Notes: generated by a model not told the origin, from the sequence alone. A stretch of 64,000 nt of DNA from Sminthopsis crassicaudata (GCF_048593235.1 NC_133618.1:29050478-29114477); one strand, 5' to 3'; shown: positions 12,980 through 55,139, numbered from the stretch's first letter. Translations and numbers: made by a program.

Positions 12980-14330
12980 CCTCAACCTCCAAACTCTGAC
13001 CTTTGGTCAGTTCCCCGGGTGAGGTCATTTGAATCCCGCCTCTTTAAGACCCGGGTTTCCTCAAGTCAACAGTAACCCCGCTTTATGTCAGGGCCGGGAT
13101 CAGGGGCCAGCTTCCTCGGCCTGGATCGTTCCCAGGAGCACACCCACTTTACAGATGAGCAAACTGAGCCATTAAGTGATGCTGAGGCAGCGGAGGCCGA
13201 ATCTGAACGTTTTATATTCACTTTAACAATAACTTCTTGGATGGTTTCATTAATTCGTTCATTTACTCATTCATTCATTCAAGGATCGCAGTGTAAACAG
13301 AAACAGGAAGGAGAGGATTTCATAGGACGCTCGGGGGACCGCCCCCCCGTGACCCCACCCCACGACTCCCGCAGCCACCAATGACAGCCTCTGGCTGGCC
13401 TCCAGAAACCCGACGCGTGACGTCACATCGGACGCCGAGCGTCTCCGCGGCCTCCGGCCGACTTTTCGCCATTCCCAGACCAGAACCCCGGGAGCTTCGG
13501 CCCGGTCTGAGTCCGCTCCGATCCCCGCTCTCTAGGCTCTGGTGCCACTCTACTCAGAGAGAACTTACACAGATCCGATTCCTCCCCCACTGAAAGCCGC
13601 CTTTCCTGTCGGAAACGGCGCCCTCTTCCTTCCTCACAACTTCCGGCGCTCACGCATGCGCCCTCGGCACCACTTCCTGCCCTTCGGCTTGTGTGCCCTT
13701 CCGGCTTCCGTTCGCTGGCGGTCTAGTTCTTCCGGGGCGCCTCCTAGGAATGTCGCGGGATCTGCCTGCACACCTGAAGCTGGTTCGGGGCGCGTTGTCT
13801 CTGCTTTCTCTCTGCCAGCGGCTTCTCTGGGCTTCCACTTCCCCTTCTGTCGAGCGAGGGGTGGGGCTAGATTTATTGAGCGAGCACTATTAAGCACCGG
13901 CTGTATGCTAAGCCCCACGCTGGGGGGGAAGGGGGGGAGATTGCCCCGTGTACCAATCGCTCCGTATTTTATTTGTGGCTATTTACGAGCCGACCCCCTT
14001 CTCTCCCCGCGTTAAGCGTTTGAGTCCCTTGGGGAGGGAATGGCCTGGCATACAGTGGGCGCTTAATAGATGCTTGCGGACAGATCTCTCTAGAGTTGCT
14101 TAGCCTCCATCCGGGGGACCAGGCGGTGAATTCGGAATATTGTGAAGGTGCGGGGGGAGCACGTTGGGCGTGCAAGCTGAAGGAGAGCGCAGGGGAGTCC
14201 CCTCTGCCGCGGGGGGAGCGTGGGTGGGAACTACTTCAGCCAATCAAGCATTCATTAGGCGCCTCCTACTCTGGGAGTAAGCCCCGCCCCTGCTCTCTGG
14301 GAGATCCCACTCTACACGCACACGTGATGA
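12980..14330. promoter_or_regulatory. CpG island / TPRKB promoter with non-coding exon 1 (donor at 13569/13568)
   Basis: High CpG density; ETS/GABP-type CTTCCGG at 13640-13646 and 13698-13704; NRF1-type GCATGCGC 13654-13661; CRE TGACGTCA 13418-13425; minus-strand donor TGT|GTAAGT. Confidence 0.8.
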
Positions 14331-15345
14331 GATAGAAGCTGGATAAACTCTGAAAAAGAATTCATTTGTTACTTAGCTGTGCAACATGAAGCAATCCTAG
14401 GCTTATGCAGTAGTCTTAGCCGTTCACTGATTCTTTGCCACCATGTTGGGGGTTTTCTTGGCAAGGATTTTCTTCTCCAGCCCATTTTACAGAAGGAGAA
14501 CCCGAGGTAACTGGGGCAAGGTCCCAGAGCTGGATTGGCGCTCCGGAAGATGAGTCCTCCCAACTCGAGGCTCTGCGGTCTGTCCATTTCCACCTTGCAC
14601 TTCCCGAAATTAACTCGCTACTCCCTTTACCCCAGCAGCTTTTTCAAATCTTTTCATCCTTTTGAGATAGTTGGTTCTTACTAAAAAGACCGTTTGCAGA
14701 GGCCGCCCCTCATCCCTCCGGGACCACATGGCCCAGGTGCCCTCCACCCTGGCTTGAGGATGACCATTCTCCCTGCAGAAGCGATCCCATTCCGTGCGTC
14801 CTCTTCCACTCTGGTTCATCTTCACCCCTTTCCCGTTACCTGGCTGCCACCAGCCTGCTCTCCCCCATCCTGAAAAATAAGGGCAAAACTCACTCCTCCG
14901 TGTATTCTCCTAGAGATCGCCCCCTGTAGCCTTTGTGGTAAGCCTGGAGAAGGCCATCTTCCCTCTTTTCTCCTCTTGTTAACTCCGGGTTCCGCCTTCA
15001 GCTGGAACTGCCGCTCAAGTTGTTCATCTAAGAGGTGACTTCTCTGCCTCCTCTTCTGTACATTTGATTCTCAAATCTACTTTTCCTTAACCTCACTGCT
15101 AACCTCCAGTCTCACCTCTCTCCTTACTTATTACATATCTCAAAATGTCTTCTAGACTCCTTAAACTCAAGAGCCCAAACGACCTATTATTTTTTTTTTC
15201 TGAAGATAACTCTCTTAAACACCATTTTCCAGATGGGAAACCTGAGCCTCATTGTGATGAGCTGGCTTGCTCCAAGGTCATACAACTTATTGGGCTGGAC
15301 TTGAATTCAGATATTTTAGAGTTGTTTTTTAAACTGTGTCCCATT

Positions 15346-15465
15346 GGGGCAGCTGGGTGGCGCAGTGAATAAAGCACAAGCCCCAAATTCAGGAGGACCT
15401 GAGTTCAAATCTGGTCTCAGACACTTAACACTTCCTAGCTGTGTGACCTTGGGCAAGTCACTTAA
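15346..15465 (+). mobile_element. WSINE1-like CORE SINE
   Basis: Same consensus as the 7412 copy, sharing its diagnostic variants. Confidence 0.9.
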
Positions 15466-16078
15466 TGGGGGGGGGGAACCCTGTGTCCCATTGTCTTTAA
15501 GCAGAGAAGATAATTGTGATTGCTACAAAAATCAAAGAATGAAATGCATTTATTAAAGGGTTCTATATGCCCAACACTGTGCTTAGAGCTGGGGGTACAA
15601 AGGAGCAGAATGCCCTACATTCTGACAAGGAGAAGTCACACTAATATGGAGGGGTGGCTGGGTTAAGAGATTTTAGTTTGGAAAGATATATGGTGATTAG
15701 AGCATTATTGGGGCAATTTGACATCCTCCTTTCAGTAACAATGGTTTATAACAGCTGCAAAGAATTGGAGGCCTATGTAAGGAAGCCTTCAGGAAGATGG
15801 CGGGGATTAAAGTGGAGCTGGACCTGGTCTCCATTAGGTGCTGACCATCAACTTGAAGCGTAGGACAGGGAGAGTCCTATGTGGCCAAAATGGCCCTAGA
15901 AGTTGTACCAGGACATTAGAGGCTTGAATGGGGGGAGGATGGGGGATTCAGACCAGTGTCTGGTGCTGGGAAGGAAGGAGATCTAGATGTGGATGGAAGA
16001 AGCAGAGTCTGAAGTGTCCCTGGATCTTTCATGGCTCTGTGAAGGCAGGATGGGGGCAGGTGGGGAGCTTGCCCAGGG

Positions 16079-19000
16079 CTATGGGCGCTGTTCAGGTAGG
16101 CCTGTCCACTTCTTACATATCCAGGGATGAGGTTTGTCACAGAGCATGTCATTCCACTTCACCTCAGTGTGGACACAGTCCTCACTCAGGCCCTTCCCAT
16201 ACTGCCAGTTGTCCGGCTGGTTGGTATTCCAAAACCTGTTGAGAAGAACAGCCCCAGGTCATGAGTAATTTGTATGTCCTGGTGGACACTTTTCCTACAG
16301 TGCACCCAGCCAGGCTAATGAGCTCAATACCAGGAAGACCTGGGGCCACATCTCAAACTGATCATTACTATGAGACCCTGGACAAGTCACTTTATCTCTG
16401 AGCCCATTGCCTCCCTGTTTTGGTGACATCCACATTGGGCTAAACAAATGCTGATGATTAACTGTAATAAAAAGATGGCTGATGTGAGAGGGAGGTTACT
16501 GCCCTGGATGTGCAGAGTACTGCTCTCCCTTTAGCCAGTTGCCTGACTTTCCTCTGTCTCTTCATCTGTATAAAAAGAAGGAGCAGGTGACCTTTCAGGT
16601 CCTTTCCCACTTTGGCCCGCTTTAAAGAAATCTCAAGAGTTTCCCAACAAAATGTCATTTGAGATTTGAGGAAGGTCTGTTATGACTGTGGATTGGGAGG
16701 AAGCTTCATGAAAAGTTGGCCAACATGGGGAGGAGATTGCAGCAGGTCTCAGTTGCCTATGGTATAGAATAAAGAGCTTGGACCAGATAATCCTCCAAGT
16801 GCCTTCTAGCTCAAAATTTGACATGACAAGTGATAGAAAAGTTTCTGCACTTTATAGAAAGAGAATAGCAACTCTATCCCAAAGTAGTTCTGCTGAAGCC
16901 CTCAATCTTCCCTGTCCAACCAGCATTATGTAGGCTACATCCTGGAAGACCAAGTCCTGGAGAGGATCCAGGAGTACTCCCTAGTGACAGCATTTATCAG
17001 TGGATTACTGTCCAAGGGGCCTTCACTGTTGGTCAGCTAGAGAGGCCAACCACGCCAGTACATTTATCAAGAAGACCCCTCAAATGGGGTTAGGATGAAT
17101 TGGGCATGATGGAGCAACAAAGGGCCTTCACCTTCTAGGCACAAGGCCAGGCCCTTCTCTCTCTGCCTTAGTACATATTCATATTTTGTTGTATGTGCTT
17201 TTTTCTGTTCATGTGTTTACATGTGTTCTTTCCCTCTAGAACAAACTCCCTGAGGGCAGGAACTTTCATTTCTATCCTTGCATCTGCATTGCCTAGCACA
17301 GTGTCCAGCGTATTGTTGCTGTTCAATCGCATCTCATTGTGACCCCTTGGACCATACTGTCCATGGAGTTTTCTTGGTAAAGATACTGGAGTGGCTTGCC
17401 ATTTTCTTCTCCAGCTCTTTTTATAGATGAGGAAACTAAGGCAGAGCAACTGGAATGAGTTGCACAGGCTCCCACAGCCAATAAATGTCAGATTTGGATT
17501 TGAACTCAGGTTTTCTTGACCCCAGACCTAGCTCTCTTATTTACTGAGTCACCTACCTGTCTCCTAGTAGGCACTTAATATATGCCATCACATAGTAGGC
17601 ACTTATATATGCTTCTTGAGTGGTTGATAGAAGGAATTCTTGTCCAAACCTGTATTGATTTAAATAGCCTCTTCCTTCCAACTCTGGGATTTAGATCTCC
17701 CTGATCTGGCTTTGGGAAAAACTGGGATGCTCTGGAGCAGGAGAAAGTCATCCCACTTACACTTTGTTCTCATTATACGGAGTCCCATCCACCCAGTGCC
17801 AGGTTCCTTCAGTGTCTTTGTCAGTCAGCCCAATCCAATGATATACTCCATTTGTCCTCTTACTCAGAAATTCCTACAGAGGAGAATTAGCAGAGAACGG
17901 GATTGTCATGGGTATATGTGTCTAATGGGTGAGATTTTCCCATTGCCTGAGAGTAGCCTCTAAGGACAAAAGGAGGACATGTCTGTTCATCTGTTCATTC
18001 TTCTCACTCTCCTTCCTTCCTTCCTTGCACTTCCCATCTTTCTGTTTCTGTCTTTGCCTCTTTGTCTCTGCCAATCTTTCTAGCTCCTTTGCTCTTTTTC
18101 CATTTCCCTCCCATGATGCTTTTCTGATTTCCCTTCACTCCTAGAACTCAAGCTCTATTCACACTTGCCCTTTTCATCTTGGGCTAAGCTGATTACATCA
18201 CTTGGTTCTCTATGGTCGGTTCCCCTGAGTGACCGCTGGTGCACAGACAACATGCCCCTCTTCTAAACATCCTTTAGGTCCTTTAGAGCATGAAAAGGAG
18301 AAATGCCATTATGAATTCTGTTGCTCGTGATTACATAGGGAATAGTAATACTTTGTCTTTTATAAGATAATGACATAACATGACCAGGTCATGGTAGCTC
18401 TATTAAGATCATAAATTCACTTGAGCCCCCAAAATATTAAGCTCTCTCTATACTAGGATATACAAACCCTAAAACCAAACAGTCATGGCTCTCAAGGCAC
18501 AAAGACAATTGAAGGAGAGCATGAATTAGGGCCTGAGATGTCTCTGTTCTTGGTACTGACTGTTCCAGGTACCTGGAAAGCTCTCCCTCTCCTCTGCATT
18601 TAAGATGCCTTGCCAGGCTAACTTCAGCATCTAAGACTTTTGACATTTTATCATTAGACTTTTTCTCCCACACTAAAATCACTCTGTTTTTACCTATATA
18701 TGTATTATTGCCCCCAACTTAATGTAAGCTCCTCAAGGTCAGGAATCATTTCTTTTTTCTAAGGGCCTTGGATTTTGAAAGCATTTCATCCAATATTTCT
18801 GATTAATTAATACCTTTACGTCATTTGGATGAGTGTTGTCTCCCTACTTTGACTGTCTATCATCACATTTCCAAAAGCAAAGTGGTTCTCTGTCCTGTTT
18901 CTTACTCTCTCTCTCTCCCCTCCAATCCCTATTCTGTCAACATTATTCTTTAGGGTCCTTGGGGAGAACACATACCTGTTCATCATCTGAGGTCACTGAG

Positions 19001-22000
19001 GCCAGATGAGAATTGTGGGCCACACAGAACTCCTCAGCCTCATCCCAAGTCTTTTGGGTCTCTGAAAAGTAGTACGCATTCCCCTTGTAGAAGTGCCAGC
19101 CTTGGATGACCAGCTGCAGAAGAGAATCTAGAAGCAGAAGGGTCAGGATAATAAAGGGAATTAGGAACTTCTGAAAAGGCATAAACTGGCTTTGCCACCC
19201 TCTCTGAAGGTTGACACTCTAGGCAGCCTCATGATTGGCCGGGTGGAGTCATGGTGGGGTAAGGGGCTAAATCTCAAACATTTTCTAAGGGACTTTTGAA
19301 TCTGTGTCCTTACTTGTTCCTCAGCACTTGGGAGGTCAGCAGGGCTGGAATTTGTGTCTTGTAGATAAGGAAATTGAGTAAGGTAAGAAAAATTGTGAGC
19401 TGCCCTAGATCCAAGCTAGTTAGGCCTAGGACCTGAGTCTCCACACTCTGCCCACCTGCCATAACTATTGATGGGATGCTTTTTTCCATGACAAAAATGT
19501 GGCTTATGATTCACAGCTGAGTGTGTTGGCCATTTCTCTGTAGGATGAGCTACCTCCCAAAGACATTCATGTTTTAACCCAAAGGGATGAATCTTTAATG
19601 GCAGAATAGCAGGTCTGGCCTCAAGTTCCTAGTCTGTACAAAAAAGGAGAGAATGAGCTCAGAGAAGGTCCCTCTCATCTCTAAATCCTATGTACCAGGG
19701 CCCTCAAAGGCCCTCTGTGATAAAAGCCATTGTCACTGTTACTCACTCTGATGGCTTTGCTGTTGCTGTTGCTGTTGTGCTGTGAGATTCTCCAGTTGCT
19801 GTTTTAAGCCTTGGACTTCAACTTTTAGGCTACTGGTGTTTACCAGGCTTTCCATTATCTTCTGTATTTCTCCATTTGCTTTCTCCAAACCACTACTTAG
19901 CCTTTGGGCCTCAGAATTGAAAGCATTTGTGTTTTCCAAAGATTCCTTTATTTTTTTTATTTCATCACTGGCACTCTTCAGACTGCTGTTTGCCATCTGG
20001 GTCTGAACATTGGCATTTTCCAGCCCCCTTTTTAATATCTGGATCTCATCACTGGCATTCTTTAGATTGCTGTTTGCCCTTTGGCTCTCAGAACTGACAT
20101 TTTGGAGATCTTTTTTTAACATCTGGATCTCAGCATTGACATTTCCCAAACAAGCACTCATCATCTGGGCTTGAGGATGAGCCGTATCCAAAACATCAGT
20201 CAGCTTCTGGCTGGAAGTCTGAATATCTGTTACCTTGTTGAGCATTTGGAAATCTGGAGGAAGTGAGAAAAGATCAGGAGGTCTCACTGCTGAGAAGAAT
20301 CACAAAGATCAAGAGAAGTTGAACTCTTCCCCTGGAACCCCAGGCTATGATAGGCAAGCCTTTATCTCCTTGTGCCCAGCAGTCAGGTGACCCCACATTA
20401 CTGGGGTCATTTAAGACAGGCCACACATGGCAAGAGGGGAAAAGAAACAACTGCTCCACTTAAAGAGGTAAGGGTTAATACGGAGACATAGCTTGGCTGC
20501 TGTAGAGATGGGGCAAATCCACCTGACCTGTGAGACTACTATTGGATTTCCTGGTGATGGGCATTATACAAATTTCCTGAGGCACTAGAGTTGGGTCTGG
20601 GAACTGGGGACAGCCTCGTTTGCCAGAAAACCAGAAAGAAGTCTATACTGAGTCACATAGTTAGGTGGAGAAGAGGTCTGCACTCTAAAAATTAAGGTCA
20701 GTGGGAAATATGCTTTGGGGCTGCAGGAAAACTTACACCCAATGAGGACCAAAAGGAAGGAGAACACAGCCAGAAATATCATGCTGCCTCTGACCATCTT
20801 TGGCTTCCTGAAGAATGAAGGCACTTCTTTCTTGGAGAGCAACCCTGAAGGATAAGATCACTGTTTAAAAGATTTAAACATGTCACATCTAATTACCATA
20901 AAGGTCAGTTTTCTTCTCTGGAAAATCCAGACAAGATATCCTTTTGGCAAGATGACAGAAGCCACCAAGTACCTCAATCAGAACTCTTATCCCCTTCTCA
21001 ACCGAGTATAGGTAAAAATGCTCTAAATAAAGGAAGGTCTATTATCAGCAAAAATGGAAGAAGATAATTATAAAAGTCAGCAATAAGGAATTGAAATAAT
21101 TTCATAAAAATAACTTTAGAAATCCATTAACAGAGAAAAATATGGTAATGAAATTATAAGGAACCAATGATTATTGATATGTCAACATTTATATATCTTG
21201 CCCTAACAATATAATTTAAATTTTAAAGGAAAAGATAGAGGCAATTAGGTGACTCATTGATTAGAGAGCTGAGCCTGGAGACAAAAAAAACCAAAAAAAA
21301 CTAGTTCAAATCTAGTCTTAGACTAACTGTGTGGCTTCTGTTTGTTTTAATTCACTGAAGAAAAAAAATTATGAACTATTGCAGTTTCTTTGCCAAAAGA
21401 AAACTACATGGACAGTTTGGTACATAGTGTCACGAAGAGTTAGAAATGACTTAACAACCACAGAAGGAAAAGATTAATTAATTATAAAAGCAACTAGATT
21501 TTTTAAAGTTAATAGATGAAGTCAATATAAAATTTCAGCCTGCTCCAATTAGAATGAAAGAAAAGTTACAAAGTTATGTGGAATATTGAAAAAAATATTT
21601 TAGAAAAATATAATTTACTTTATGCAAATGAATAGAGCTTAACTTTAGCAAAGTTGTAGTATATTCAGCTTTTATATATATTAGCAATAAAATATTGCTA
21701 GAATAAAAAGAAATTCTGTTTAAAAAACTGCAGGAAGTATAAATTACTTATAAGTCTAACTTTCAAGAAACACTTAGGAACTATAAGGACACAATTATAA
21801 ATCCCTCTTATGTAAATAAATGGAGAATTAAACAGTTGGAGAAATATTAATTTCTCTTGAGCTCATGAGCCAATACAATATATCAAACTATTAAAGGATT
21901 TATTTGTGGTGCTAAAAAAATAAGTAAAACTCAACTAGAGAGACCAATGGTCAAGAATATTAAAGGACAATGAAAAACAAAAAGGAAAAAGGGGAACTTA

Positions 22001-25000
22001 ATAATAGTACCAGGCTTCAAACTATACTACAAAGCTGTAATCATCAAAATACTTTGGTCCTGGGTAAGACATAGGTTAATCAATAAAATAGATTAATTAG
22101 GCAAGACAGAAGCAAACGAACATAATAAAATAGTGTTTGATAAGCTGACAATCCCAGGTTAAGAACATATTATTTGACAAAAACTATTGTGAAAACTGGT
22201 AAACAAATTGGCCAGAATTAGATATAGACTAATACTATATACTAAGATAAGCTCAAAATAAGTACATGATTTAGACATAAAGGATGACTTCATACGCAGA
22301 GTAGAGGATCATGGAAGAAGTTACCTGTCAGATCTATGAACAGAAGAACAGTTAATAACCAAATAAGAGTTTCCTAGGGCAACAAAATGGACGATTTTTA
22401 TAACTTAAAATCAAAAGGGGGCATCTAGGTGGTGTAGTGGATAGAGTACCAGCCCTGGAGAAGTCAGGAGGACCTGAGTTCAAATCTGATTTCAGACACT
22501 TCCTAGCTGTGTGACCCTGGGCAAGTCACTTAACCTCAATTGCCTCAGCCATAATTTAAAAAATCAAAAAAGGTTTTGCACAAACAAAACCAATACAGCT
22601 AAAATTAGAAGCAAAATATTGGGGAGGGAGCTTTGCAACAAGTTTCTCTGATAAAGGTCTTATTTCTCAGATAACATAGTGAATTAAGTTAAATTTATCA
22701 AAAATAAGAGCCTTTCTCCAGTTGATAAAAGATCAAAAAATATGGATAGATTCTATTTAAAAGAAGAAATTCAATCTATCAATAGTTATGCAAAAAAGAA
22801 ATGGTCCAATTCACAAATAGAGAAATGCAAATTAAAATAACTCTAAAGTACCACCTCATACCAATCAGATCAGATAGACTGAGTTGACTAAAAAAAAATG
22901 ACATGCTTAAAGAAATCATGGGGAAATAAAAACTTTGATGCCTTGCTGATGGAGATGTAAACTGATCTGAGCATTCTAGAAAGCAATTTGGAATTATGCC
23001 CCCAAAGCTATTAAATCATGCATGTCTTTTGACCTAATATTAGTCCTATGCCCTAAAGAGATCAAAGATAGAGGAAAAAGACTAATGTGTACAAAAATTC
23101 CATGTAGACAGGATACTTTAATAAATTCTGTAAGAAATGATGAAAGGAAGACTGTGAAGTGATGCAAAATGAATAAGCAGAATCAGGAGAACAATTTATA
23201 AAATATAAAGATAATCAAATTTAGAAGACTCAGGAACTCCAATTAGCACAATGACTAATTTCAATTAAAAAAATCATGATTAAACATACTATCTATATCT
23301 AAATAGCTGATGGATTCAGAGTGAAGACTGAAGCTTTCCTTTCTTTTTTGGACATGGGCTAATGCAAGAATTTGTTTTGCATGACTACATATTTATGATG
23401 GATTTTGTTTTTGCTTTGCAGTGGATGAGGAGAGGTGAGAGGAGGAGGAGTAAGGATTTTGAATAGAAATAGAATAGAATTAAATAGAAAATAGAAAAAA
23501 TAAATAAATTAACAAAACAAATATATGAGACTTTCACACACATACATATACATATATACACAATTCTCTAAGACATAGAGAAGAAACATAAGTGCTGAAA
23601 ACTAATAAAGAAAAATAATACAGAAATTGGTAGAATCCAAAGTGACTTAATAATAGTTGAAGTCAAAGATTAAATGAAAGCAACAATAAAAAGCATGTGA
23701 AAAATCAATAACATCACATTCTAAAATTTTTAAGACCGGCAAGATTTCTGCAATTGTCAGGAACCTTTAAAAGAAGGAATTGGGTCTTAAGTCTTAGAGA
23801 TTAGAAAAAGAAAACAGACTTGGACACCAAGAGAAAAGACTCAAGATCTGAATGGGATCTTTCAGTGATCTTTACTCTTAACTGGACAGATCAATTATTG
23901 TGTCTTAGATGGATACCTTTGGAGTTTTCTGTGTGGGGGCATTTATCAAAGGCCACAAGAATTATGCTACATTATTATGTGGTACTCAGACTGCTACTGC
24001 TACTGCTGCTACCTTAGACTGAAAAGGGAGATGGAGGCCAAGATGGCAACTGGTACAGCAGATCCTTGTTTCTGAATCCAAACTCAATGTGAGAAAATAG
24101 TCTCTAGTCGGAAGAGATCTCAAGGAAATGTTTTATCTATTCTCGGTGTTCATCTTCTATGTTCCAGATGGTTGTATATTACATAGTTTTAAGAATTTAA
24201 TGAAGATAATTCTTAATAGTGTTTGTGTTTTGGGTGAGGATATGGATAGAGGCTGAAGGAAAAATGGAAATCCTTGCCTTTGAGAAATTTATATTATCAT
24301 GAATCAGTGTGCACACAAATGCATATGAATCAAATGCAAGGTGATGGGGTTGGGCAAGGGGAGCTGGTACATACACTATGATATAGCTACATTGGTTCCT
24401 TGCAGTTCCTCATACATGACACTATTATTTCCAGATTTTGACGCTGTACTTCTGTCCTGTGAATCTCCATGCTTCTCAGATTCTTTGGCTTCCTTCAAAA
24501 CTTAGCTCAAATCCTCCCTTCTAAAAGAGGTCTTTCTTCATCTGTCCCTCAATGGCTAGTGCTTTAAATGCTTTTTGGTTGACAGACCTTAAGGAATGAA
24601 CCACAGACTGAGGTTTTGATTGCCCCTTGTGCTTTGCAAAGTGGTCCCTACAGAGAAAGGTAGGATTTGCCTTCTGGTTCCACATAACCCACTCATCCCC
24701 CATCCCTGACTAAATGTCCAGACACTAGTCAAATAGTCAATAAGTATATATTAAGAACTCACTATGTACCAGGAACTGTATTAAGTGCTAGAGTTAAAGA
24801 AAAAGGCAAAAACAGTCTCTCCTCTGTAGAGGTATACGCTCTAATGGAGGCAACCTATAAATGAATGAATGAATGAAAAATACATCCAGATTAAACCAAA
24901 AATGAAGATTTTAATAGCCAAGGGAGCTATAGTAAGATAAGCTGAGCTAAGCTTTGTTTAGGAGAGGGTCTGAGGGAAGATGAAATGGAAGGGCAGCTAA

Positions 25001-25100
25001 TGCTGAGTGCAGGAGGTCTGGCAGGCTCACCTCGGGGCCATAGGAAGATACGTTGGCTAAGTGCACTGAAATGAGCTTCTTGGTTTTGTTGGCCTTCCAT
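16079..25100 (-). CDS. CLEC4F: Type II C-type lectin, CLEC4F (Kupffer cell receptor)-like with langerin-like exon 1, ~391 aa; exons 25100-25031, 20844-20737, 20596-20528 (tentative), 20253-19747, 19127-18976, 17873-17761, 16235-16079
   Basis: Cytoplasmic MEGQQNQEAHFSALSQRIFLWPR; TM GSMIFLAVFSFLLVLIG; heptad neck with N-glycosylation sites; CRD QGWHFYKGNAYYFS..KTWDEAEEFCVAHNSHLASVTS..EQ|EFL...WIGLTDKDTEGTWHWVDGTP|FWNTNQPDNW...EDCVH...WND..C...WICK. Phases 1-1-1-1-0-2 keep the frame. Upstream in-frame ATGs exist at 25142 and 25151. Confidence 0.85.
17310..17560 (-). mobile_element. MAR1/MIR-like SINE in lectin intron
   Basis: TTTTCTTGGTAAAGATACTGGAGTGGCTTGCCATT...GATGAGGAAACTAAGGCAGAG. Confidence 0.7.
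21500..23480 (+). mobile_element. Degenerate L1 ORF2 3' half in lectin intron 1
   Basis: Recognisable blocks such as AAACTATACTACAAAGCTGTAATCATCAAAAT, GAGAAATGCAAATTAAAATAACTCT and GCAATTTGGAATTATGCCC; many indels. Confidence 0.75.
22417..22548 (+). mobile_element. WSINE1-like SINE nested in the L1, TSD about AAAATCAAAA
   Basis: SINE consensus; AAAATCAAAA at 22407-22416 and again at 22560-22569. Confidence 0.85.
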
Positions 25101-28100: not shown

Positions 28101-28444
28101 CATTTGTAAAATGCCACTTCTCAACAATAAGATTTTATTGTGTCCTATGATACTGGGGAGACAAAGTCAAAAATGAAAGTCAAAATTTTTGGCAGCATTG
28201 GAGGCTTATGCAAATGTGAGTTATTATTATCTGCACTGAAATATTCTCTAGATTTTATGCTAATGTCCTGTTAAGAGATAAGAGATTTTTGCCTGAGGAT
28301 TTTGATATTTATAACTTGTAGATGGAACAACAGGGATGTATGGGGGGTTCAGGAGAGTTAGCAACTGTGATGTGTAGGTCTGCTAAACCCTTTTCAGGGC
28401 TGCTTATTCACCTTTCTGTCACCAACTTTCATGTAGACCTCCAA

Positions 28445-33927: not shown

Positions 33928-33981
<54 letters not shown>
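33928..33981. repeat. (AC)n microsatellite
   Basis: Directly visible perfect run. Confidence 0.95.
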
Positions 33982-44432: not shown

Positions 44433-44897
44433 NNNNNNNNNNNNNNNNNNNNNNNNNNNNNNNNNNNNNNNNNNNNNNNNNNNNNNNNNNNNNNNNNNNN
44501 NNNNNNNNNNNNNNNNNNNNNNNNNNNNNNNNNNNNNNNNNNNNNNNNNNNNNNNNNNNNNNNNNNNNNNNNNNNNNNNNNNNNNNNNNNNNNNNNNNNN
44601 NNNNNNNNNNNNNNNNNNNNNNNNNNNNNNNNNNNNNNNNNNNNNNNNNNNNNNNNNNNNNNNNNNNNNNNNNNNNNNNNNNNNNNNNNNNNNNNNNNNN
44701 NNNNNNNNNNNNNNNNNNNNNNNNNNNNNNNNNNNNNNNNNNNNNNNNNNNNNNNNNNNNNNNNNNNNNNNNNNNNNNNNNNNNNNNNNNNNNNNNNNNN
44801 NNNNNNNNNNNNNNNNNNNNNNNNNNNNNNNNNNNNNNNNNNNNNNNNNNNNNNNNNNNNNNNNNNNNNNNNNNNNNNNNNNNNNNNNNNNNNNNNN
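44433..44897. other. Assembly gap (465 N)
   Basis: N run; lies just downstream of exon 4 of REG pseudogene B. Confidence 1.
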
Positions 44898-45057: not shown

Positions 45058-46181
45058 CTTCAGGGGATTGTGAAGGCCTATCCAGATGGAGCCCCAGCTG
45101 CCACATTCTCAGCAATCATAGAGGACACAAAGGAAGCTTCAGCTTCTTTTGGCAGGGATGCTAGGTGACCCCGTGGCAGATTCTGACAATTAGCTATAAG
45201 GGAGTAGGGAAAGGTTTAGTTATTAGCAATGGAGAGGAGGAAGGAGCAATGGGAAGCTTTGGGATAAGAAATCTCTAGACTCAGCCTCTTCTTTTCCTCT
45301 TCTTGGATCCATCTCCTTGATAGTCCCATTTCCCCCCTTCCCTTTTCTCTCTAAGTTTCTCACCACTCTGAGAACTGTCCTCAAAATAGTGCTGAAGGTG
45401 GTGGGAAGACCCTGGAGGGAGGGACCCACCTGTTGGCTCATACTTGGCACATTGGAGGTGCTTATTAATTCTCAACCATTGAATTTTTGGTTGAATTGCC
45501 AGGCTTAGGCCCAGCAGGGAAGTGAAGAGAGGGCCTAAGAAGCCTGGGGGCATCACCCAGGGCAGCATTTCTTTCAATCTGAAGGGAGGGCCATAGGATT
45601 GGGGCAAAAGACATTCCTAATTTAGAGATGGGACCAGAGAAAGGAAGTTTACAGTTGGAAAGAGCAAAGATCTTCCTTTTTTTTTCTTTTTGCTTTCAGA
45701 GTTGATGACAATCCCTCTCTTGTGCCCTTTCTCTTCCCTCTAATAACTAGGGAAATCTGGAGACACTATGGGGAAAAAGCTAATGGCATAGGAGCCAGAG
45801 ACACATCCTGTCATACATATTCTAGGATAGCTTTTGCTGACAACCTTCCCCTCTAGCAGCTTTCTCCCCAAAGTTAAAATGGCTCATTCCCTATCCCAGC
45901 ATAAGGAATGGCCTGAATGACATGGAATGATCTCTCCACTTCCAGTTTATCTGTCTTAAAAGACTGTAGGATGGTATATATGACCAGGAAGTGTCAGATC
46001 CTTTATAGAATAAACTAGAGGGGGAAATAGATATGAGCAGGAATGAAAGGGAGGAACCATGGCAGGATGGTTCTAGGAAGGAATCAAGGCAGATGAAGAG
46101 AGTAGATAATAAAGAGTCAGAGTACACATGTTGACAAGTGATGAGCTAATGTTGGACATGGGGACGATTCTTTTCCAAGAA
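45058..46181 (-). pseudogene. REG-family pseudogene, copy B
   Basis: TATA at 46002-46007. Exon 2 at 45568-45430 (MLPWVMPPGFLGPLFTSLLGLSLA plus a 63-nt insertion). Exon 3 is missing. Exon 4 at 45193-45058 (NCQNLPRGHLASL...EASFVSSMIAEN/GSIWIGLHNPLK) is 2 nt short with frameshifts and a GC donor. Confidence 0.85.
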
Positions 46182-48334
46182 GTGTTCAGGAGCTGGCATA
46201 GGCAATGCCCTCTTCCTGGCATGCAAGATCAAAGATATTTCAGGAGCATAGAATTGGTTCATTCTCAAATGATCATAAAATCATAGAACTTGAACTTGGA
46301 AACACTTCAGAGGCCATTTAGTTCAACCTCCCTAATTTCAGTTCAACCCCTCCAATTTCACATTTAAGGAAACAAGCCCAAGAAGGTTGTGTGAAATACA
46401 GCTTTATTTTTATTTTTTACTAACATTTAACTGAAATTTAGCATTTCCTCTAATTATTTGAAAACATTCTGAGGAGTCCATAGATTTCATCGGACTGTCA
46501 AAGGGATCCATGCTGAATAAGAAAGATTCCTGTTGCTCCATTCCAATAGTCCAGGGAGTCAGGAACAGGAAGAAGAACATATGCCCCCAGGAAGGAGTGA
46601 GGTTCCAACAAAGCCCTGAAAGGGGAGGATCAGATCCAGAAAAAAGGTGCGGGCACGATCCTAATAACAGAAGTAAACAAAGAGACTGAAAATACCAACA
46701 TATATTACCTGTATGTTCAATCCTTTAGCTAAGAAATATGGTGGCAAGGGTGTTGAATGAAAACCACAATCCACAAGTGGCCAGTATTAACGAGACATTT
46801 TTAGTATAGAACAGAATGAACCAGATGCCTAATCTAGCCCAGACTAAGTTTCTGGGAGAAAAGGGCTAAGGAAATCAGGAAGTGCACAGGAGACCAGTAG
46901 CTCCCCACTGCCCAAATTCATGATGGTGCACACACATCACAACTGTGCAACCTCAGAGCAACAGGACACAGCCAACTGCTGGTCTCTCCTCTCTCAGGTC
47001 CATGTCGACTAATTGTTTAAATTTTTAAGAATAGAAGATTTGAGAAACGGAAGAGATACAAAAGGACTCTAGTAATCACCAGGATCAAGCCTACTTGAAT
47101 GTCCCTTGTCAAGTGCTTGGTGTCTACTGGTAATTAGGGATTGCAGGCTGCCTTTTTCTATATACTCTGTAACTTGTCTTTATTCCTCTTTAAAATTTGT
47201 CTCCTAGGATAGAAGCCACTACTATCTTGTACCCACGAAGTACATCCCCGTTTCTCATTCAGGATGTTCTTTCTCTTTTACTTTTACCATGTCATTAGTA
47301 TAGGTTCAAAAACCATTTTTATTATATATTATATTATTATTATTATATTATATGTAATAATATATATAATATAAATAGCACTTATTATATGCCAAGTACT
47401 GAGCTAAGTGCTGCTGGTACAAAAAGGCAAATATCAGCAGAGTCTTGGATGTGCCCAGTCCATGCCCAGATGACAGATTCTCCCTTTATTTAACATCTTC
47501 AGACCAAGGCTGGAAGACTACTTGGTAGGGAACTTCTGTGGGACTTCTTTTTCAAATGCTGGTTATACTAGATGGCCTTCACTGCCCTCCCTTCCTGCTC
47601 TGAGGCTCTGCAATTTGAGAAGCAGATTCCTCTGTTGATCTATTATGGTTGCCCCAGTAAACTCCTTGAGGGAAGATACTGTCTTTCATCTCTTTTGGTA
47701 TCCCCATCACCTAGCAAAGTGCCCAGCTTATAATATGTCGATTGATCAAATTTCTCACCAATCACCATGCTGCCGTGGACAGAGACCATTCCCAGACCTT
47801 AATTCTTTCATGATTGGAACTCCATTGCCTCCATTACTGGTTGCCTCTGCTCCTCCCGTACTCTAGGAAGGAAATGCCTCCATGAATCTAGGGGTTCCTA
47901 CATCCCAGAGGGAAGAGAATGGCATGGGATAGATAGTGGAGGTGCAAGTGTCTTTCTTACTCTAGCTGAGGAATCAGCTTCACACAATAGTTTGAGCTGG
48001 TTCTGTTTGGGGAACCCTTTTCTCAGGCTTAGTAGAGTTAAAGGATATTGTTACTCCATCATCACCTATGGTCTGGGTGGAGAGGATTAGGCAGGGCAGT
48101 GGTTAGAAAATATATAAATAGTGAAATAAATAGTGAAACACCTTCCACTAACCACCTACCTCCCCTGCTTCCCACCATAAACAGATGAAGAGCATCTTGC
48201 TCAAACTCCGTCCCTCAAGACATTTATCCTAGTCTCTAAAAATTCTACATGCTACCATTCCTACTGCTCTGCTGGGATTCCTCAGCACCAGCCCCCTTCC
48301 ATATCCATCACATCCTCTCTATAAGATCTGGGAA

Positions 48335-48710
48335 GAGTCTTTGAACCCTACAAACTCCCAACCATTTCTCTGTCTCATGGTGCCTGCCCCTGCTGCTGTC
48401 CAGGCCTCTCCTATTCCCTGTGAATATGTCCAAACTCCCAGGTTTTTTGTGGGACTCATCTTGTGTCAGGTCTGGCAGCAGCAAGCATGTGAGGAGCAGT
48501 CCTGAGAAGCTGGGGGACATCATAGCAGAGAGCTATTTGATTGATTCTGGGGAGGAGACAAGAGAAATCCTGTTCTCCCTGGGCATGTCCCACCTAAGGA
48601 TCATGGAGAGAAGGGGACAAAGATAGTGCCTTAGACCTCTATTGAACCAGGGTCATACTGTTCTCCTGTACTCTTGGCCCAGACTATGGCTAACCTCTCT
48701 CTTTTTGTTC
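48335..48710 (-). pseudogene. REG-family gene fragment, copy C (exon 2 with flanking introns)
   Basis: Paralogous to 54085-54470 of copy D. Reads MMSPSFSGLLLTCLLLPDLTQ; first ATG mutated, donor GT>AT; no exons 1 or 3-6 recognisable nearby. Confidence 0.85.
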
Positions 48711-48736
48711 AAAAGAGGCTAAGTAGTAGGCAGTAT

Positions 48737-49281: not shown

Positions 49282-50609
49282 CCAGAAATGAACAGAGAGG
49301 ATCTCCAAATCCACATGCCAGGACAGGTGGCATCTGGCCAAGTCAATTAAAGAAGCATCTGATGAAGACTCCATGTTTGCTGAAGTGATGTCTATCAGAG
49401 AGATCAATGGGGAACAAATCTGGTGGGAATAGCACAATGGCATCAAATGATTTCTGAGGCTCTGTGCCATTGGAGGCTTGTTACCCCCCCCCAAAATAGA
49501 ATATTTATGTATTCTAATTATATGAATTCCTGTGGATACTGGGCTGCCATTGTCTTTGAGGTCGCCCTCAAAGCATGTACTTTACTTGCTGATGCTGACT
49601 TCACCTCCAACATTTAGAGAAGTCCAGTAGTTCCTAAACATCAGATTTGTTTCTTCCTTCTGTAAATGATCCCTGCATTTCATTGTTCCCAATGATGCTG
49701 TATAAATTTGGAGCAGAATTATCCCTGTTTTTGTGACTAAAAGATTTTATTGCTCCTTTTCTTATCATGTCTTCTCCTGAAATGCCTTTGTTTTAAACTA
49801 ATTAGTTGGGCATCATAAGATAGTTTTAGTAGACGATAACCCATAGAACACCTCAGATTAGGTGTAAACTTCTTTAGGCAATTTGCCCTAGGACTTGAGG
49901 TGTGCTTCCAAGCACTACATTTGGGATAGATTTGTTGGAAAGATGGTAGAAGGCTATGTTAATGGCCCAAGGTATCTGCCACATGGCAATTTTATGCATT
50001 TTCTCTGGCTGTCCTCCATGCCTGAAATTGTCCCCCTGCTCATCTTCATGTCCTAGCATAGGAGATGGAAGAGGGACACGGCCACTACAAGGTCCCAGGG
50101 ATCTTACTTGTGTGTTAATATCAACATTGTCTCCCATTCTGAACAGGACCCTTCCCAGTAAAGTCTCAAAGCACGCACAATACTTCAACACATGAGGATG
50201 GCTGCTCCATTAACTATGTACTTTTTTTGAGAGGGAATAAGGAAGAACCCAAGAATGTTTTATATGTGTCCAAGTACGATGGTCTAGCCAGACACTCTAG
50301 GGCATCGCCCTCCTTACAAGTGGCTTAAACAGAGCATTGCCTGACTCACTGCCATATACAGTTTCATTATTCTGAGTTCTGTGTGATCCATTGGTACTCT
50401 TATTTATTAATTACTAAATTTGAAACCTTTTTCATTAATTACTCAATTTATTTCTGATACCTCTTTCCCAATATTATGTGTCATTTTTGGAGAAACTGTA
50501 CAAATGCCCCTGTCCCAATATGCAGTTCCTCACCTCTTTATACATAATACAGTCCCCCAAACTCCTAATCTTCAAGAAACATGTGTGATCTTTTGTTCAA
50601 AGTTAATAG

Positions 50610-52176: not shown

Positions 52177-54315
52177 CTAGGCTTTGAACTTGCAGAGGTA
52201 GAGGTTCTCCTTCTGACAAGGTTCGTCTTTCCATCTCTGGAATCCTGTAAAGAGATGGTCTAAGTTAGATGGAGAGACAGGTCAGGAGGGTAGGTCCCTA
52301 GTCTGTTGACTGAAACTTCTTGGTACCAGATATTCTATTCATCAACTTTACCCATGAGGAGCTGAAAACAAAGGATAATGAAGAGGAGGGAATAGAAGTA
52401 AAAAGAGAGAACAGAAAAAATGAAAGAAAGTAAAGAAAGAAAAGGGTTGGTAAAGGGCAAAGAAGAGACAAGAGAGGTGGGGAAAAGGAAAGAATAGACA
52501 AGAAATAGAGAGGAAAATCTAGAAAGGAGGTGCCTCATCCCCCCAGGCTTCCACACAACAAAGGAGAAGAAGATGTTCCTGTGCAGCTGGCAGAGGGGAA
52601 GGGTTGAGCTCACCAGACTCAGGAGTCAGGCTCACACAATAGTTAGGATTGGTCTTTGCTGGGAAGCCCGTCTCCCAGGCATGGTAGAGGTAAAGGGCAT
52701 TGCTGCTCCATCTCCACCTGCGATTCTGGGGGAGATGATTGAGAAGGGGGCAGTTAAAGAAGAGTGAGACACCCCACCACCACCTACCTCTTTTAACCCC
52801 CTAACTAATAGACGAACTGCACATGTGCCTTTATTTAGCCCAGATCTCCCAACATGCATCTTCTGTTTTCTAAATCTTTCTTGCTGCTGTGATCCTGGCT
52901 GCTGCTTCTGGCATTATTCTACCTTCATCCCATTTTCTGAGATCCAGGCAGAGTCTACTATCCTTCCCACCTTCTCTACTATCCCCTGCCCTGAAAGCCT
53001 TGAACCTCTAGGGGAGTTCAAGGTCCTGGGTTGCCTTAGGCTGTTCCCCAGATGAAAAATTTCCTGATTGCGACTCTTTTCTATGAGGATGGTACAGAGA
53101 AGTCCCATCTGGGGGATGCTGAGAAATAAGAACAAAAATCCTGCTCGTTGAATGAAAAAGAATGGATGGTGATACTGAAATGAAATGGGGGCTAAATTGG
53201 GGAGAAAAAAATTCTGCTGGTGGAGGTGTAGAAACCTTCTGGAACTGGACACAGTCCAGAACTCTCCCTCATCCTGCCCCCTGCACTGCTCATTTATTTC
53301 CCTAATTCTAGTGCTTTTCTCAAGGTCTTAGACCTCCAAGACTGGTAGGAATCACTTCCCCATCATCCACACACACTGTTGTTCCCCTTCTCTCCAGTCT
53401 CAGACAGGGACGGCCCCTCGGTCATACCTTGTTGGGGTCGTGCAAACCAATCCAAACTGGGTTCTGACCAACCCCGTTCTCCACAATCATGGTGGCCACA
53501 AAGGCGGCCTCAGCCTCGTTGAGCAGGGAGCCCAGGTGGCCCGAGGGGTAGCCCTGGCACAGCAGCTGTGGAGGGCAGGGAGCAGGTAAATGTGTGGGGA
53601 AGGGAGCGAAGGAGGCAGGAGAAGGTTCCTGGGAGCTTCAGGGGACAGGATGGTCAATGGGGTAAGAGAAGAGGCTAAAGGCCCAGGGGGAGGGGGCCAT
53701 TATAAGATGAGTATGAGATGACAAGGATAACCACTGTGGGAAGCTGAGCTCTAAGGGACACAGAAAATAAGAGAGCCCAGTTCTGGAGTCCCCTGACAGG
53801 GGAAGATCAGGGTGAGAGATGAGGGGCTAAGGACTTGTTGTGACCACACTGCTGACCCCAAGGAATATGGAGACAGGGACACAGACCCAGTACCTTCTCC
53901 CCAACCCACCTCGGCAGTGTTCCAGGTCTCCTTGGGACCCAATACTCCATAGCAGTGGGAGCCATGGAAGCCAAAGCCCTGGGGGCAGGAGCTCCTGGCA
54001 GAGGGGGGTGCAGGGGCCTCTTGCTTGCCTGGGGAGGGAAGAGAGCAGTTACAGGGGAGGTCAGCTGGGGCTTCTGCTCCCTGGACATCAGTCTTTGAAC
54101 TCTACAACCCCCCAACTGCTTCTTCCCTGTCTCACTGTGCACCCTCCTTCCATCCAACCCCTTCCCTTTCCCTCTTACTGTGTCCAAGCCCCTGTTCTAG
54201 GCCCAGGTGGGCAGTCAGAGGGAGGCCTGAGGGACCCACCTTGTGTCAGGCAGAGGAGCAGCAGGCAGGCGAGGAGCAGCCCTGAGACGCTGGGGGACAT
54301 CATGGCAGATAGCAT
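52177..54315 (-). CDS. REG-family secreted C-type lectin, copy D, ~170 aa; coding exons 54315-54240 (alternative ATG 54318), 54028-53910, 53565-53428, 52725-52614, 52244-52177
   Basis: MLSAMMSPSVSGLLLACLLLLCLTQG|KQEAPAPPSARSSCPQGFGFHGSHCY...TWNTAE|LLCQGYPSGHLGSLL...VWIGLHDPNK|NRRWRWSS...NPNYCVSLTPESG|FQRWKDEPCQKENLYLCKFKA*. Exon sizes 76/119/138/112/68; all junctions GT-AG. Confidence 0.93.
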
Positions 54316-54720
54316 CATCTCTGATTCTGGGGAGGAGACAAGAGAAACCCTGATCTCCCACCCAAGAGCCATGGGGAGAAGGGACAAGGATGGTAGCCTA
54401 TTCCTCAACAGACTCATAGTGCTGCTCCTGTTTCCTGGGCCCAGGTTGGGACTGAATTCCCTACTTTTGTCTTCCTCTTCTCTCCTTCCTGGGGTCTCAG
54501 GGAATATGCAGACTCCAGGAGCAGGACAGAATCTGGGAGCCACTGGAGGGGCAGACCAGTGTGCAGGGACCCTTCTTTTAGAATCGTTTCAAAATGACCA
54601 TTTACTGGCCTTTCCCCCAAGGTAATGGCCTCCTGGAGCAGTTGCCTCCTCTCCCCATGGGAAGGGAACAGCCTCAGGGGCCTGCAGGAACCCAGTCTCC
54701 CAGGCTTCTCCCTCACTTAC

Positions 54721-55139
54721 CTAGCTGAAGAAATCGTGTGTCTGAGCAGAAGAGGACGGGACCTTTATAGAGAGAGGGCCCATTATGGAGGCAGGGCCAG
54801 AGCACAGGGGCTGGTGAGGGGCAGGGGCTTCCTGGAAAAGGGTGAGGTCTTCCTCAGTTTTGGGTCAGGAGCAGAGAAGAGCCTTGGGTTCTTCCCATAA
54901 TGTGAGGTAGAAGCCCATGACTGGCTCCTGCCCCAAAGCTCGCCAGGTGCCACGTTCCCAAAACTTGGAGACTGGAGGAAGAGAGAACACACAGAGGAAT
55001 GAGTGAGGTTCCAGCAGGGCTTGGATGGAGAAAACTGAAATCTGAGAAAGGGTTAGCGTCAGAGACCTTGGCCTTGGAGAAGGAGAATTCCAGTCAGTGG
55101 ACTGAACCCTCTGTCTTCCTATTAATTACTGGAATTTCC
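54721..55139 (-). promoter_or_regulatory. REG copy D exon 1, TATA box, STAT (GAS) and kB-like sites
   Basis: Donor TAG|GTAAGT at 54721; TATAAAG at about 54763-54769; TTCCTGGAA 54829-54837; TTACTGGAA overlapping GGAATTTCC 55126-55139. Confidence 0.7.

What the first reader, a model, noticed from the sequence alone, without database searches (positions are those of the whole stretch)
14330..54837. TPRKB, CLEC4F/CD207-like and REG genes are contiguous: a compact C-type lectin cluster
Seen: a group II membrane lectin ends about 2.4 kb from the TPRKB TSS and starts about 4 kb from the 3' end of a REG gene; all lectin genes are co-oriented. Recalled human chr2 positions are CLEC4F/CD207 about 70.8 Mb, TPRKB about 73.7 Mb and REG1/REG3 about 79 Mb. 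The marsupial order may preserve an ancestral linked innate-lectin locus that was later split by eutherian inversions, which would suggest a tandem origin or co-regulation of these lectin groups.
Basis: partly seen in the sequence, partly recalled or inferred. Interest (0 to 1): 0.7.

Follow-up and report, generated by a model that had tools for sequence, protein, structure and literature searches.

The report
Marsupial CLEC4F lectin beside REG array
In the fat-tailed dunnart, a Kupffer-cell-type membrane lectin gene (CLEC4F-like) really does sit between TPRKB and the start of a large array of secreted REG lectin genes, but the two lectin kinds are unrelated neighbours, most likely brought together by chromosome rearrangement and not a family that arose in place.

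Summary
On the minus strand the window encodes exactly three RefSeq dunnart proteins:
- TPRKB
- a 385-aa CLEC4F-like type II lectin (LOC141554047)
- a 176-aa REG protein (REG-A)

It also holds decayed REG fragments and a second intact REG gene (REG-C). A NAT8-family gene lies on the other side of TPRKB. Both junctions lie in gap-free sequence. Gap 1 sits inside a phase-0 intron of REG-A. Gap 2 lies beside the REG fragments and matters to no claim.

The order is not a dunnart artefact. In Antechinus, the REG, lectin and TPRKB proteins carry consecutive accession numbers. The devil (lectin, TPRKB) and the wombat (same 12.5-Mb scaffold) agree.

- **Common origin:** the lectin and REG domains share no intron position and are 30% identical, so a tandem origin is not supported.
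- **Ancestry:** CD207, always CLEC4F's tandem neighbour in placentals, lies on another chromosome in seven marsupials. At least the REG–CLEC4F junction therefore looks derived in marsupials. No monotreme or opossum check was possible.
- **Co-regulation:** untested.

The scan had already noted the adjoining REG array in the next window, but not the TPRKB–CLEC4F junction.

The parts
5466..6134 (+). NAT8-family N-acetyltransferase, single coding exon (an upstream in-frame ATG at 5349 would add 39 residues)
   Evidence: Pfam GNAT, E 5e-20. The nearest atlas clusters are 'N-acetyltransferase family 8 member 3' and 'N-acetyltransferase 8', score 0.98.
11076..12893 (-). TPRKB coding region, four coding exons (12893-12753, 12243-12121, 11722-11546, 11162-11079) plus stop
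   Evidence: Exact match to RefSeq dunnart TPRKB P0216 with GT-AG, phase-0 introns. Pfam CGI-121 on three exons.
13400..13800 (-). CpG island, likely TPRKB promoter and transcription start
   Evidence: GC 0.64-0.65 and CpG observed/expected 1.0-1.1 in 200-nt bins. The transcription start itself was not mapped.
16079..25151 (-). CLEC4F-like type II C-type lectin gene (RefSeq LOC141554047, 385 aa). Exon 1, cytoplasmic tail: 25151-25031. Exon 2, transmembrane: 20844-20737. Exon 3, coiled-coil neck: 20253-19747. CRD exons: 19127-18976, 17873-17761, 16235-16082, then stop.
   Evidence: Exact match to P0217 with canonical introns. Pfam Lectin_C on the three CRD exons. The best solved relative is the mouse CLEC4F CRD, 6jjj. 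The neck hits eutherian CLEC4F at E 2e-38. QPD and WND motifs are present.
19962..20143 (-). 42/84-nt tandem repeats inside the neck exon (14-residue units, two heptads each)
   Evidence: Tandem Repeats Finder.
29072..31900 (-). REG-A, intact secreted REG lectin gene (RefSeq XP_074141092.1, 176 aa), five coding exons
   Evidence: Exact match to P0230 with intron phases 1,0,0,1. The best solved relatives are lithostathine and REG3A.
30250..30546 (.). Assembly gap 1, inside REG-A's third coding intron (phase 0)
   Evidence: N run. The flanking exons are in frame and match one RefSeq protein and its orthologues. The flanks do not overlap each other.
45058..48532 (-). Decayed REG remnants: a signal-peptide-like exon (within 48311-48532), an exon-5-like piece with three stops (48058-47966), and an exon-4-like piece with a frameshift (45290-45058)
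   Evidence: Six-frame reading and tblastn with P0230. The pieces are not in gene order, and no exon-3-like or exon-6-like piece was found.
44433..44897 (.). Assembly gap 2, just downstream of the exon-4-like REG fragment
   Evidence: N run. The flanks neither overlap nor repeat. Its content is unknown and was left so.
52177..54318 (-). REG-C, apparently intact REG gene of 171 codons: 54318-54240, 54028-53910, 53565-53428, 52725-52614, 52244-52180, then TAG
   Evidence: Canonical splice sites and the same phases as REG-A. 45-59% identical to REG-A exon by exon. The best solved relative is lithostathine.

Best explanation
This is a real piece of marsupial gene order: NAT8-like, TPRKB, one CLEC4F-type membrane lectin gene, then the first members of a long REG array.

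The lectin is the marsupial counterpart of the Kupffer cell receptor. It is a type II membrane protein with a coiled-coil neck and a galactose-type (QPD) sugar site, so it should form a trimeric galactose/GalNAc-binding surface receptor. That function is inferred. The REG genes encode small secreted single-domain lectins that lack the calcium/sugar motif.

The two kinds belong to different, anciently separated branches of the C-type lectin superfamily. They did not arise from one another here. They were most likely placed side by side by chromosome rearrangement in the marsupial lineage, the same event or events that tore CLEC4F away from its sister and usual tandem neighbour, CD207.

The arrangement goes back at least to the common ancestor of dasyurids and wombats. 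Shown: gene identities, exon structures, the physical adjacency in the dunnart, and the absence of shared introns. Inferred: adjacency in other marsupials (from accession order and shared contigs), the marsupial-side direction of the rearrangement, and function.
For: Genes and distances: exact matches to RefSeq proteins P0216, P0217 and P0230 with canonical introns. REG-C is intact.

CLEC4F type: summed exon scores against solved chains are 58.9 + 42.9 + 61.7 bits for mouse CLEC4F. For langerin they are 65.4 + 37.4 bits, with nothing listed for the third exon. The neck hits eutherian CLEC4F at E 2e-38. The CRD is 55% identical to mouse CLEC4F and 48.5% to the dunnart's own CD207, and QPD/WND are present. 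The marsupial lectins form one clade (support 92/96), well apart from marsupial CD207.

Shared order in other marsupials:
- Antechinus: REG, lectin and TPRKB are XP_051830206, 207 and 208-209.
- Devil: lectin and TPRKB are XP_023351357 and 358.
- Wombat: lectin XP_027695732-733, TPRKB 734-735, REG 737, all on one 12,485,224-nt scaffold.
- Koala: XP_020856723, 740-741 and 776.
- Control: in the rodent Fukomys, TPRKB and CLEC4F are 28 GenBank protein numbers apart, about what I recall of the human map.

No common origin: there are no shared intron positions and identity is 30%. REG exons hit REG1, REG3 and REG4 but no group II lectin.

Derived state: CD207 is on a different chromosome or scaffold from TPRKB and the lectin in dunnart, Antechinus, devil, wallaby, possum, koala and wombat. 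In placentals the two genes are tandem in every species examined (PMC6422238).
Against: The accession-number proxy is imperfect. The dunnart's own REG-A is 583 numbers away from the lectin although only 4 kb apart. In wombat, koala and wallaby the numbers run lectin < TPRKB < REG, which does not match the dunnart's physical order. The exact order outside dasyurids is therefore unknown.

No outgroup gene order (monotreme, American opossum) was obtained, so the direction of change rests on the CLEC4F-CD207 parsimony argument alone.

No reads could be laid across the junctions. Nothing was learnt about expression, so selection for co-regulation is not excluded.
Confidence: 0.6

Rival explanations
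1. One reading: the marsupial order preserves an ancestral therian lectin locus (REG, CLEC4F and possibly CD207 next to TPRKB), which inversions later spread over 8 Mb of placental chromosome 2p.
For: All three gene groups lie on one chromosome arm in placentals (positions recalled, not tested here). The order is old within marsupials. In turtles and birds, TPRKB sits on the largest chromosome, while the turtle CLEC4F-like genes sit on a 142-147-Mb chromosome. Some joining of these regions therefore took place on the way to therians, and its first form is unknown.
Against: This view requires CD207 to have left the locus alone in marsupials and at least two further breaks in placentals. REG1-type genes are reported absent from birds and reptiles (PMC8144736), so no outgroup supports it. 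No shared gene structure links the two lectin kinds.
Confidence: 0.17
2. The adjacency is kept by selection, because the membrane lectin and the REG genes share regulatory elements and form a co-regulated innate-immunity cluster.
For: All lectin genes are co-oriented and the spacers are short, 3.6-3.9 kb. The order has persisted since dasyurids and wombats diverged.
Against: In placentals, CLEC4F is expressed in liver or spleen macrophages (PMC6422238), while REG proteins come from pancreas and gut (general knowledge). TPRKB, a housekeeping gene with its own CpG island, is just as close. Persistence of an order over this time span needs no selection.
Confidence: 0.1
3. The junctions are an assembly misjoin in the dunnart genome.
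For: Two N gaps lie in the window. Read-level confirmation failed for technical reasons.
Against: Neither gap lies in a junction. TPRKB, the whole lectin gene and the 3' half of REG-A lie on one uninterrupted stretch, 1-30249. Independent assemblies of Antechinus, devil and wombat give consecutive or near-consecutive accession numbers for the same genes. Six DNA runs from two samples and two studies hold 77-84% of the sampled words of 24200-30199.
Confidence: 0.03

Closest known systems
Placental CLEC4F-CD207 (langerin) tandem pair on human 2p13.3 (Taylor, Snelling, Smith & Drickamer 2019, PMC6422238)
   Same: Same protein plan: type II orientation, heptad-repeat neck, CRD encoded by three exons, QPD galactose-type site. 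The dunnart CRD is 55% identical to mouse CLEC4F.
   Different: There is no CD207 next door. Marsupial CD207 lies on another chromosome. The neck is much shorter (385 aa in total, against about 550-610 in placentals) and is encoded by one exon, giving six coding exons against the seven the paper gives for placentals. The dunnart also has a second, 597-aa CLEC4F-like gene elsewhere on the same chromosome (P0123).
Placental REG cluster (REG1A/1B, REG3A/3G) on human 2p12
   Same: Small secreted single-CTLD proteins with five coding exons, tandemly arrayed. The best solved relatives are lithostathine and REG3A.
   Different: Here the array abuts CLEC4F-like and TPRKB, and according to earlier notes of this scan it is much larger (at least 16 genes). 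The copies are neither clear REG1 nor clear REG3.
True paralogous C-type lectin clusters, such as the NK gene complex or the Dectin-1 cluster (general knowledge)
   Same: Several C-type lectin genes lie close together in one orientation.
   Different: Those clusters grew by tandem duplication of one group with a shared exon plan. Here two groups (II and VII) with no shared intron position are merely juxtaposed.

Membership tests
CLEC4F (Kupffer cell receptor, group II C-type lectin) | Type II layout: short N-terminal tail, one transmembrane stretch, coiled-coil neck, C-terminal CRD | tested here: met
   P0217 is encoded exactly by six exons in that order. The hydrophobic stretch GSMIFLAVFSFLLVLIG was read directly and no membrane predictor was run. 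The neck exon gives coiled-coil-type Pfam matches only.
CLEC4F (Kupffer cell receptor, group II C-type lectin) | Heptad-repeat neck of the CLEC4F kind | tested here: met
   The neck exon alone finds eutherian CLEC4F (P0122, Chinchilla) at E 2e-38 among 1.8 billion representatives. It has a 42-nt (14-residue) periodicity.
CLEC4F (Kupffer cell receptor, group II C-type lectin) | CRD encoded by three exons | tested here: met
   Introns lie after residues 245, 296 and 333. The same plan is described for CLEC4f in PMC6422238.
CLEC4F (Kupffer cell receptor, group II C-type lectin) | Gln-Pro-Asp galactose-type site with the Glu and Trp-Asn-Asp ligands | tested here: met
   QPD, E and WND align with mouse CLEC4F. 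The dunnart's CD207 has EPN at the same place. Sugar binding itself was not tested.
CLEC4F (Kupffer cell receptor, group II C-type lectin) | CRD closer to CLEC4F than to langerin or other group II lectins | tested here: met
   Exon scores against solved chains. 55% identity to mouse CLEC4F against 48.5% to the dunnart's own CD207. Tree, though no placental CD207 was included in it.
CLEC4F (Kupffer cell receptor, group II C-type lectin) | Tandem neighbour of CD207, stated for all species examined in PMC6422238 | tested here: not met
   There is no CD207-like exon in the window apart from the lectin's own. Dunnart CD207 lies on a 258,107,999-nt chromosome, and the window's genes on the 684,596,898-nt one. 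The same split is seen in six other marsupials. This is a feature of the locus, not of the protein.
REG family (group VII, free CTLD) | Signal peptide plus a single CTLD, about 165-180 aa | tested here: met
   REG-A is 176 aa and REG-C 171 aa. Pfam Lectin_C on exon 4 of REG-A. The signal peptide was read directly and not predicted.
REG family (group VII, free CTLD) | Nearest solved relatives are lithostathine/REG1, REG3 and REG4 | tested here: met
   lithostathine at E 6e-10 and 7e-11, REG3A at E 4e-9, REG4 at E 2e-5.
REG family (group VII, free CTLD) | Five coding exons with conserved intron phases | tested here: met
   Phases are 1,0,0,1 in both REG-A and REG-C. That this equals the placental REG plan is recalled, not tested.
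TPRKB / CGI-121 (KEOPS subunit) | CGI-121 domain and orthology to TPRKB | tested here: met
   Pfam PF08617 on three exons. Exact match to RefSeq dunnart TPRKB, and 83-95% identity of one exon to TPRKB across vertebrates.
   None of the 2 CLEC4F-like and 3 REG intron positions within the lectin domain coincide. Identity is 29.8% over 124 aligned residues, the same as CD207 against REG at 28.8%.

The most novel reading that the evidence does not exclude
The therian ancestor had one compact innate-lectin locus next to TPRKB, holding REG, CLEC4F and perhaps CD207. Marsupials still keep it, minus CD207, and placentals scattered it along chromosome 2p. The persistence of the order in marsupials would then reflect shared regulation.
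Probability: 0.12. Interest if true: 0.55.

Novelty: new variant of a known kind. Interest (0 to 1): 0.3.

Why it matters
All the genes are already in RefSeq, so no new gene is involved. The new point is one of genome organisation. The one study of CLEC4F evolution states that CLEC4F lies in tandem with langerin in every species examined, and it mentions no marsupials. In marsupials the pair is split between chromosomes, and CLEC4F-like sits between a housekeeping gene and a much-expanded REG array. That gives a dated, easily checked rearrangement breakpoint next to two fast-evolving immune gene families, and it is a natural case for asking whether CLEC4F expression depends on its langerin-side neighbourhood. 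It also warns against reading physical closeness of C-type lectin genes as common descent.

Tried and rejected

3. Literature: no paper combines CLEC4F with marsupials or with synteny of CD207 or TPRKB. The marsupial karyotype paper (PMC4222502) has no gene-level data for this region. The dunnart annotation paper does not mention these genes.

4. Turtle outgroup: the TPRKB cluster held only one turtle species, so TPRKB and CLEC4F-like could not be compared within one species. The cross-species comparison of chromosome sizes is weak.

5. Earlier scan notes, searched by sequence and by words for the second lectin gene: nothing found.

6. A CD207 remnant in the window: none.

7. Accession numbers as a strict positional map: rejected, because the dunnart's REG-A is 583 numbers from its 4-kb neighbour. 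Only consecutive numbers were used as positive evidence.

Exons were searched one at a time by reference. Full-length comparisons used database proteins (P0216, P0217, P0230), which a local script mapped back onto the window junction by junction.


Full report
WHAT IS IN THE WINDOW. The window comes from the fat-tailed dunnart. Earlier notes of this scan said so, and I confirmed it, because three RefSeq proteins of Sminthopsis crassicaudata are encoded here without a single difference.

- TPRKB (P0216, XP_074141673/4) is encoded on the minus strand by four coding exons between 12893 and 11079.
- A 385-aa protein, 'uncharacterized LOC141554047' (P0217, XP_074141675), is encoded by six exons between 25151 and 16082.
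- A 176-aa 'lithostathine-1-alpha-like' protein (P0230, XP_074141092) is encoded by five exons between 31900 and 29075.

All introns are GT-AG. A NAT8-family acetyltransferase gene lies at 5466-6134 on the plus strand. A CpG island at 13400-13800 marks the likely TPRKB promoter.

The lectin's stop codon (16079-16081) is therefore about 2.3-2.7 kb from the TPRKB promoter. Its start codon (25151) is 3.9 kb from REG-A's stop (29072-29074).

THE GAPS. Gap 1 (30250-30546) lies inside the phase-0 intron of REG-A between 31145 and 29534. The exons on both sides are in frame and belong to one RefSeq protein. The residues on either side of that intron (…DPNK then xRRWKW…) run on unbroken in the Antechinus, devil and wombat orthologues. 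Gap 2 (44433-44897) lies next to a frameshifted exon-4-like REG fragment. What it hides is unknown and I left it so. The flanks of neither gap overlap. Neither gap lies in the two junctions on which the finding rests. Positions 1-30249 are uninterrupted sequence.

THE MEMBRANE LECTIN IS CLEC4F-TYPE.
- The three CRD exons each match Pfam Lectin_C.
- Against solved structures, the exons score 58.9, 42.9 and 61.7 bits for the mouse CLEC4F CRD (6jjj). For langerin they score 65.4 and 37.4 bits, with nothing listed for the third exon.
- The neck exon alone, searched against 1.8 billion representative proteins, finds a Dromiciops CLEC4F-like protein (E 1e-60) and eutherian CLEC4F (E 2e-38). It has a 42-nt, 14-residue periodicity.
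- The CRD is 55% identical to mouse CLEC4F and 48.5% identical to the dunnart's own CD207.
- It carries QPD, Glu and WND, where CD207 has EPN.
- In a CRD tree the marsupial proteins of this type form one clade (support 92/96), close to placental CLEC4F and far from marsupial CD207. No placental CD207 was in that tree.

Taylor et al. (PMC6422238) describe the same plan for CLEC4f: a type II protein, a heptad neck, a CRD in three exons, and QPD. I therefore read the gene as the marsupial CLEC4F counterpart. It probably encodes a trimeric galactose/GalNAc receptor, but function and tissue are inferred, not shown.

THE REG GENES. REG-A is intact. REG-C (54318-52180) is an intact 171-codon gene with canonical splice sites and the same intron phases (1,0,0,1). 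It is 45-59% identical to REG-A exon by exon. Both match lithostathine, REG3A and REG4 among solved structures. Between them lie only decayed pieces:
- a signal-like exon at about 48.4 kb;
- an exon-5-like piece with three stops (48058-47966);
- an exon-4-like piece with a frameshift (45290-45058).

Earlier notes of this scan report that the array continues past the window's end with seven more intact copies and at least 16 genes in all. I did not re-test that.

IS THE ORDER REAL AND SHARED? 

I therefore used two indirect fingerprints given by the protein collection: the length of the contig that carries each protein, and the RefSeq or GenBank accession numbers. Within one annotation run these numbers mostly follow gene order.

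As a control, in the rodent Fukomys, TPRKB is KFO21076 and CLEC4F is KFO21104, 28 proteins apart on one scaffold. That is about the number of genes I recall between them in human.

In the marsupials:

| Species | REG | CLEC4F-like | TPRKB | Contig |
|---|---|---|---|---|
| Antechinus flavipes | XP_051830206 (in the same 90%-identity cluster as REG-A) | 207 | 208-209 | one chromosome |
| Tasmanian devil | – | XP_023351357 | 358 | one chromosome |
| Wombat | 737 | XP_027695732-733 | 734-735 | one 12,485,224-nt scaffold |
| Koala | 776 | XP_020856723 | 740-741 | – |
| Dromiciops | – | XP_043838390 | 406 | same chromosome |

Two caveats apply. The dunnart's own REG-A is 583 numbers from its 4-kb neighbour, so non-consecutive numbers say nothing. 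In wombat, koala and wallaby the numbers run lectin < TPRKB < REG, so the exact order in diprotodonts may differ from the dunnart's.

Six DNA runs from two samples and two studies hold 77-84% of the sampled words of 24200-30199. That shows the sequence exists in independent data, but it does not show continuity.

Taken together, a misjoin or a dunnart-only rearrangement is very unlikely. TPRKB-CLEC4F-like adjacency goes back at least to the dasyurid-wombat ancestor, with REG genes beside or very near.

IS IT ANCESTRAL? Taylor et al. state that CLEC4f lies adjacent to CD207 in all species they examined. They also state that the two are each other's closest relatives, the product of a duplication. 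Their text mentions no marsupials.

In the dunnart, CD207 (P0224) is on a 258-Mb chromosome, while TPRKB, both CLEC4F-like genes and REG-A are on the 684.6-Mb one. The same split between contigs is seen in Antechinus, devil, wallaby, brushtail possum, koala and wombat.

From the human map as I recall it (not tested here), CD207 lies on the 5' side of CLEC4F in placentals. In the dunnart the REG array lies there. If the sister genes were born in tandem, the marsupial state is derived at that very junction.

Le Roy et al. (PMC8144736) report that REG1/lithostathine genes are absent from birds and reptiles, so a REG-CLEC4F linkage cannot predate mammals.

In birds and one turtle, TPRKB sits on the largest chromosome. 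Three other turtles carry their CLEC4F-like gene on a 142-147-Mb chromosome. This is a weak, cross-species hint that TPRKB and CLEC4F were not linked in early amniotes.

None of this fixes the direction of change. That needs monotremes, and I could not reach them. I put the ancestral reading at about one in six.

TANDEM ORIGIN AND CO-REGULATION. Within the lectin domain, the CLEC4F-like gene has introns after residues 296 (phase 0) and 333 (phase 2). REG-A has introns after residues 71, 117 and 154 (phases 0, 0, 1). In an alignment, none of these positions coincide. The two domains are 29.8% identical, no more than CD207 against REG at 28.8%. REG exons find REG1, REG3, REG4 and snake-venom lectins among solved structures, but no group II receptor. 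A tandem origin is thus not supported. Co-regulation could not be tested: no RNA run held the stretch.

VERDICT. It is an ordinary, if neat, difference in gene order between marsupials and placentals, at a place where two fast-evolving lectin families meet. The modest new point is that marsupials break the 'CLEC4F always next to langerin' rule.

METHOD NOTE. Exons were searched one by one by reference, and full-length work used proteins returned by the tools. The REG-C model was checked locally, exon by exon, carrying split codons only.

Noticed in passing
not in the window; dunnart chromosome of 684,596,898 nt (protein P0123): A second dunnart CLEC4F-like gene, LOC141554048 (597 aa, long neck, QPD site, XP_074141676), carries the GeneID and accession right after the window's lectin but is not in the window. 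Its CRD is 71% identical to the window's. It sits on a long branch of the marsupial clade, and no closer orthologue appeared in other marsupials.
   Followed up: partly
window 45058-48532: The REG remnants are out of gene order: the exon-5-like piece lies upstream of the exon-4-like piece. This may be the wreck of two copies, not one.
   Followed up: partly
proteins P0230 and P0217: RefSeq accession numbers of physically adjacent dunnart genes differ by 583 (REG-A against the lectin). REG-A spans an assembly gap, and the numbering may follow contigs and not chromosome position. This is a warning for anyone using accession order as a map.
   Followed up: no
proteins P0142/P0006/P0243, P0144/P0074/P0239, P0245/P0226/P0235: In wallaby, koala and wombat the accession numbers run lectin < TPRKB < REG, unlike the dunnart's physical order TPRKB-lectin-REG. 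Diprotodonts may carry a small local inversion.
   Followed up: no
proteins P0076 and P0183 (Tenrec ecaudatus): In the tenrec, TPRKB (contig 166,697,355 nt) and CLEC4F (contig 88,314,485 nt) are on different chromosome-sized contigs, unlike the other placentals seen here.
   Followed up: no
window 1056-2173 (-), 41515-43017 (-), 62685-63092 (-), 49016-49333 (-), 7980-8258 (-): LINE-1 debris. There is an ORF1 with Transposase_22 and dsRBD domains at 1056-1565. The 500-aa open frame at 41515-43017 reads like the ORF2 tail by eye, as do several short tail fragments, but the five stretches scanned gave no Pfam match.
   Followed up: partly
window 7430-7648 (+), 15344-15556 (+), 22352-22525 (-), 56467-56688 (-): One interspersed element recurs; its translation contains ...NSGGPEFKSDLRHLTLPSCVTLGKSLN.... 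It is SINE-like. One copy lies in the TPRKB-lectin spacer and one in the lectin's first intron.
   Followed up: no
window 28444-28531: An (AGG)n/(AGAAGG)n microsatellite lies in the lectin-REG-A spacer.
   Followed up: no
   Followed up: no
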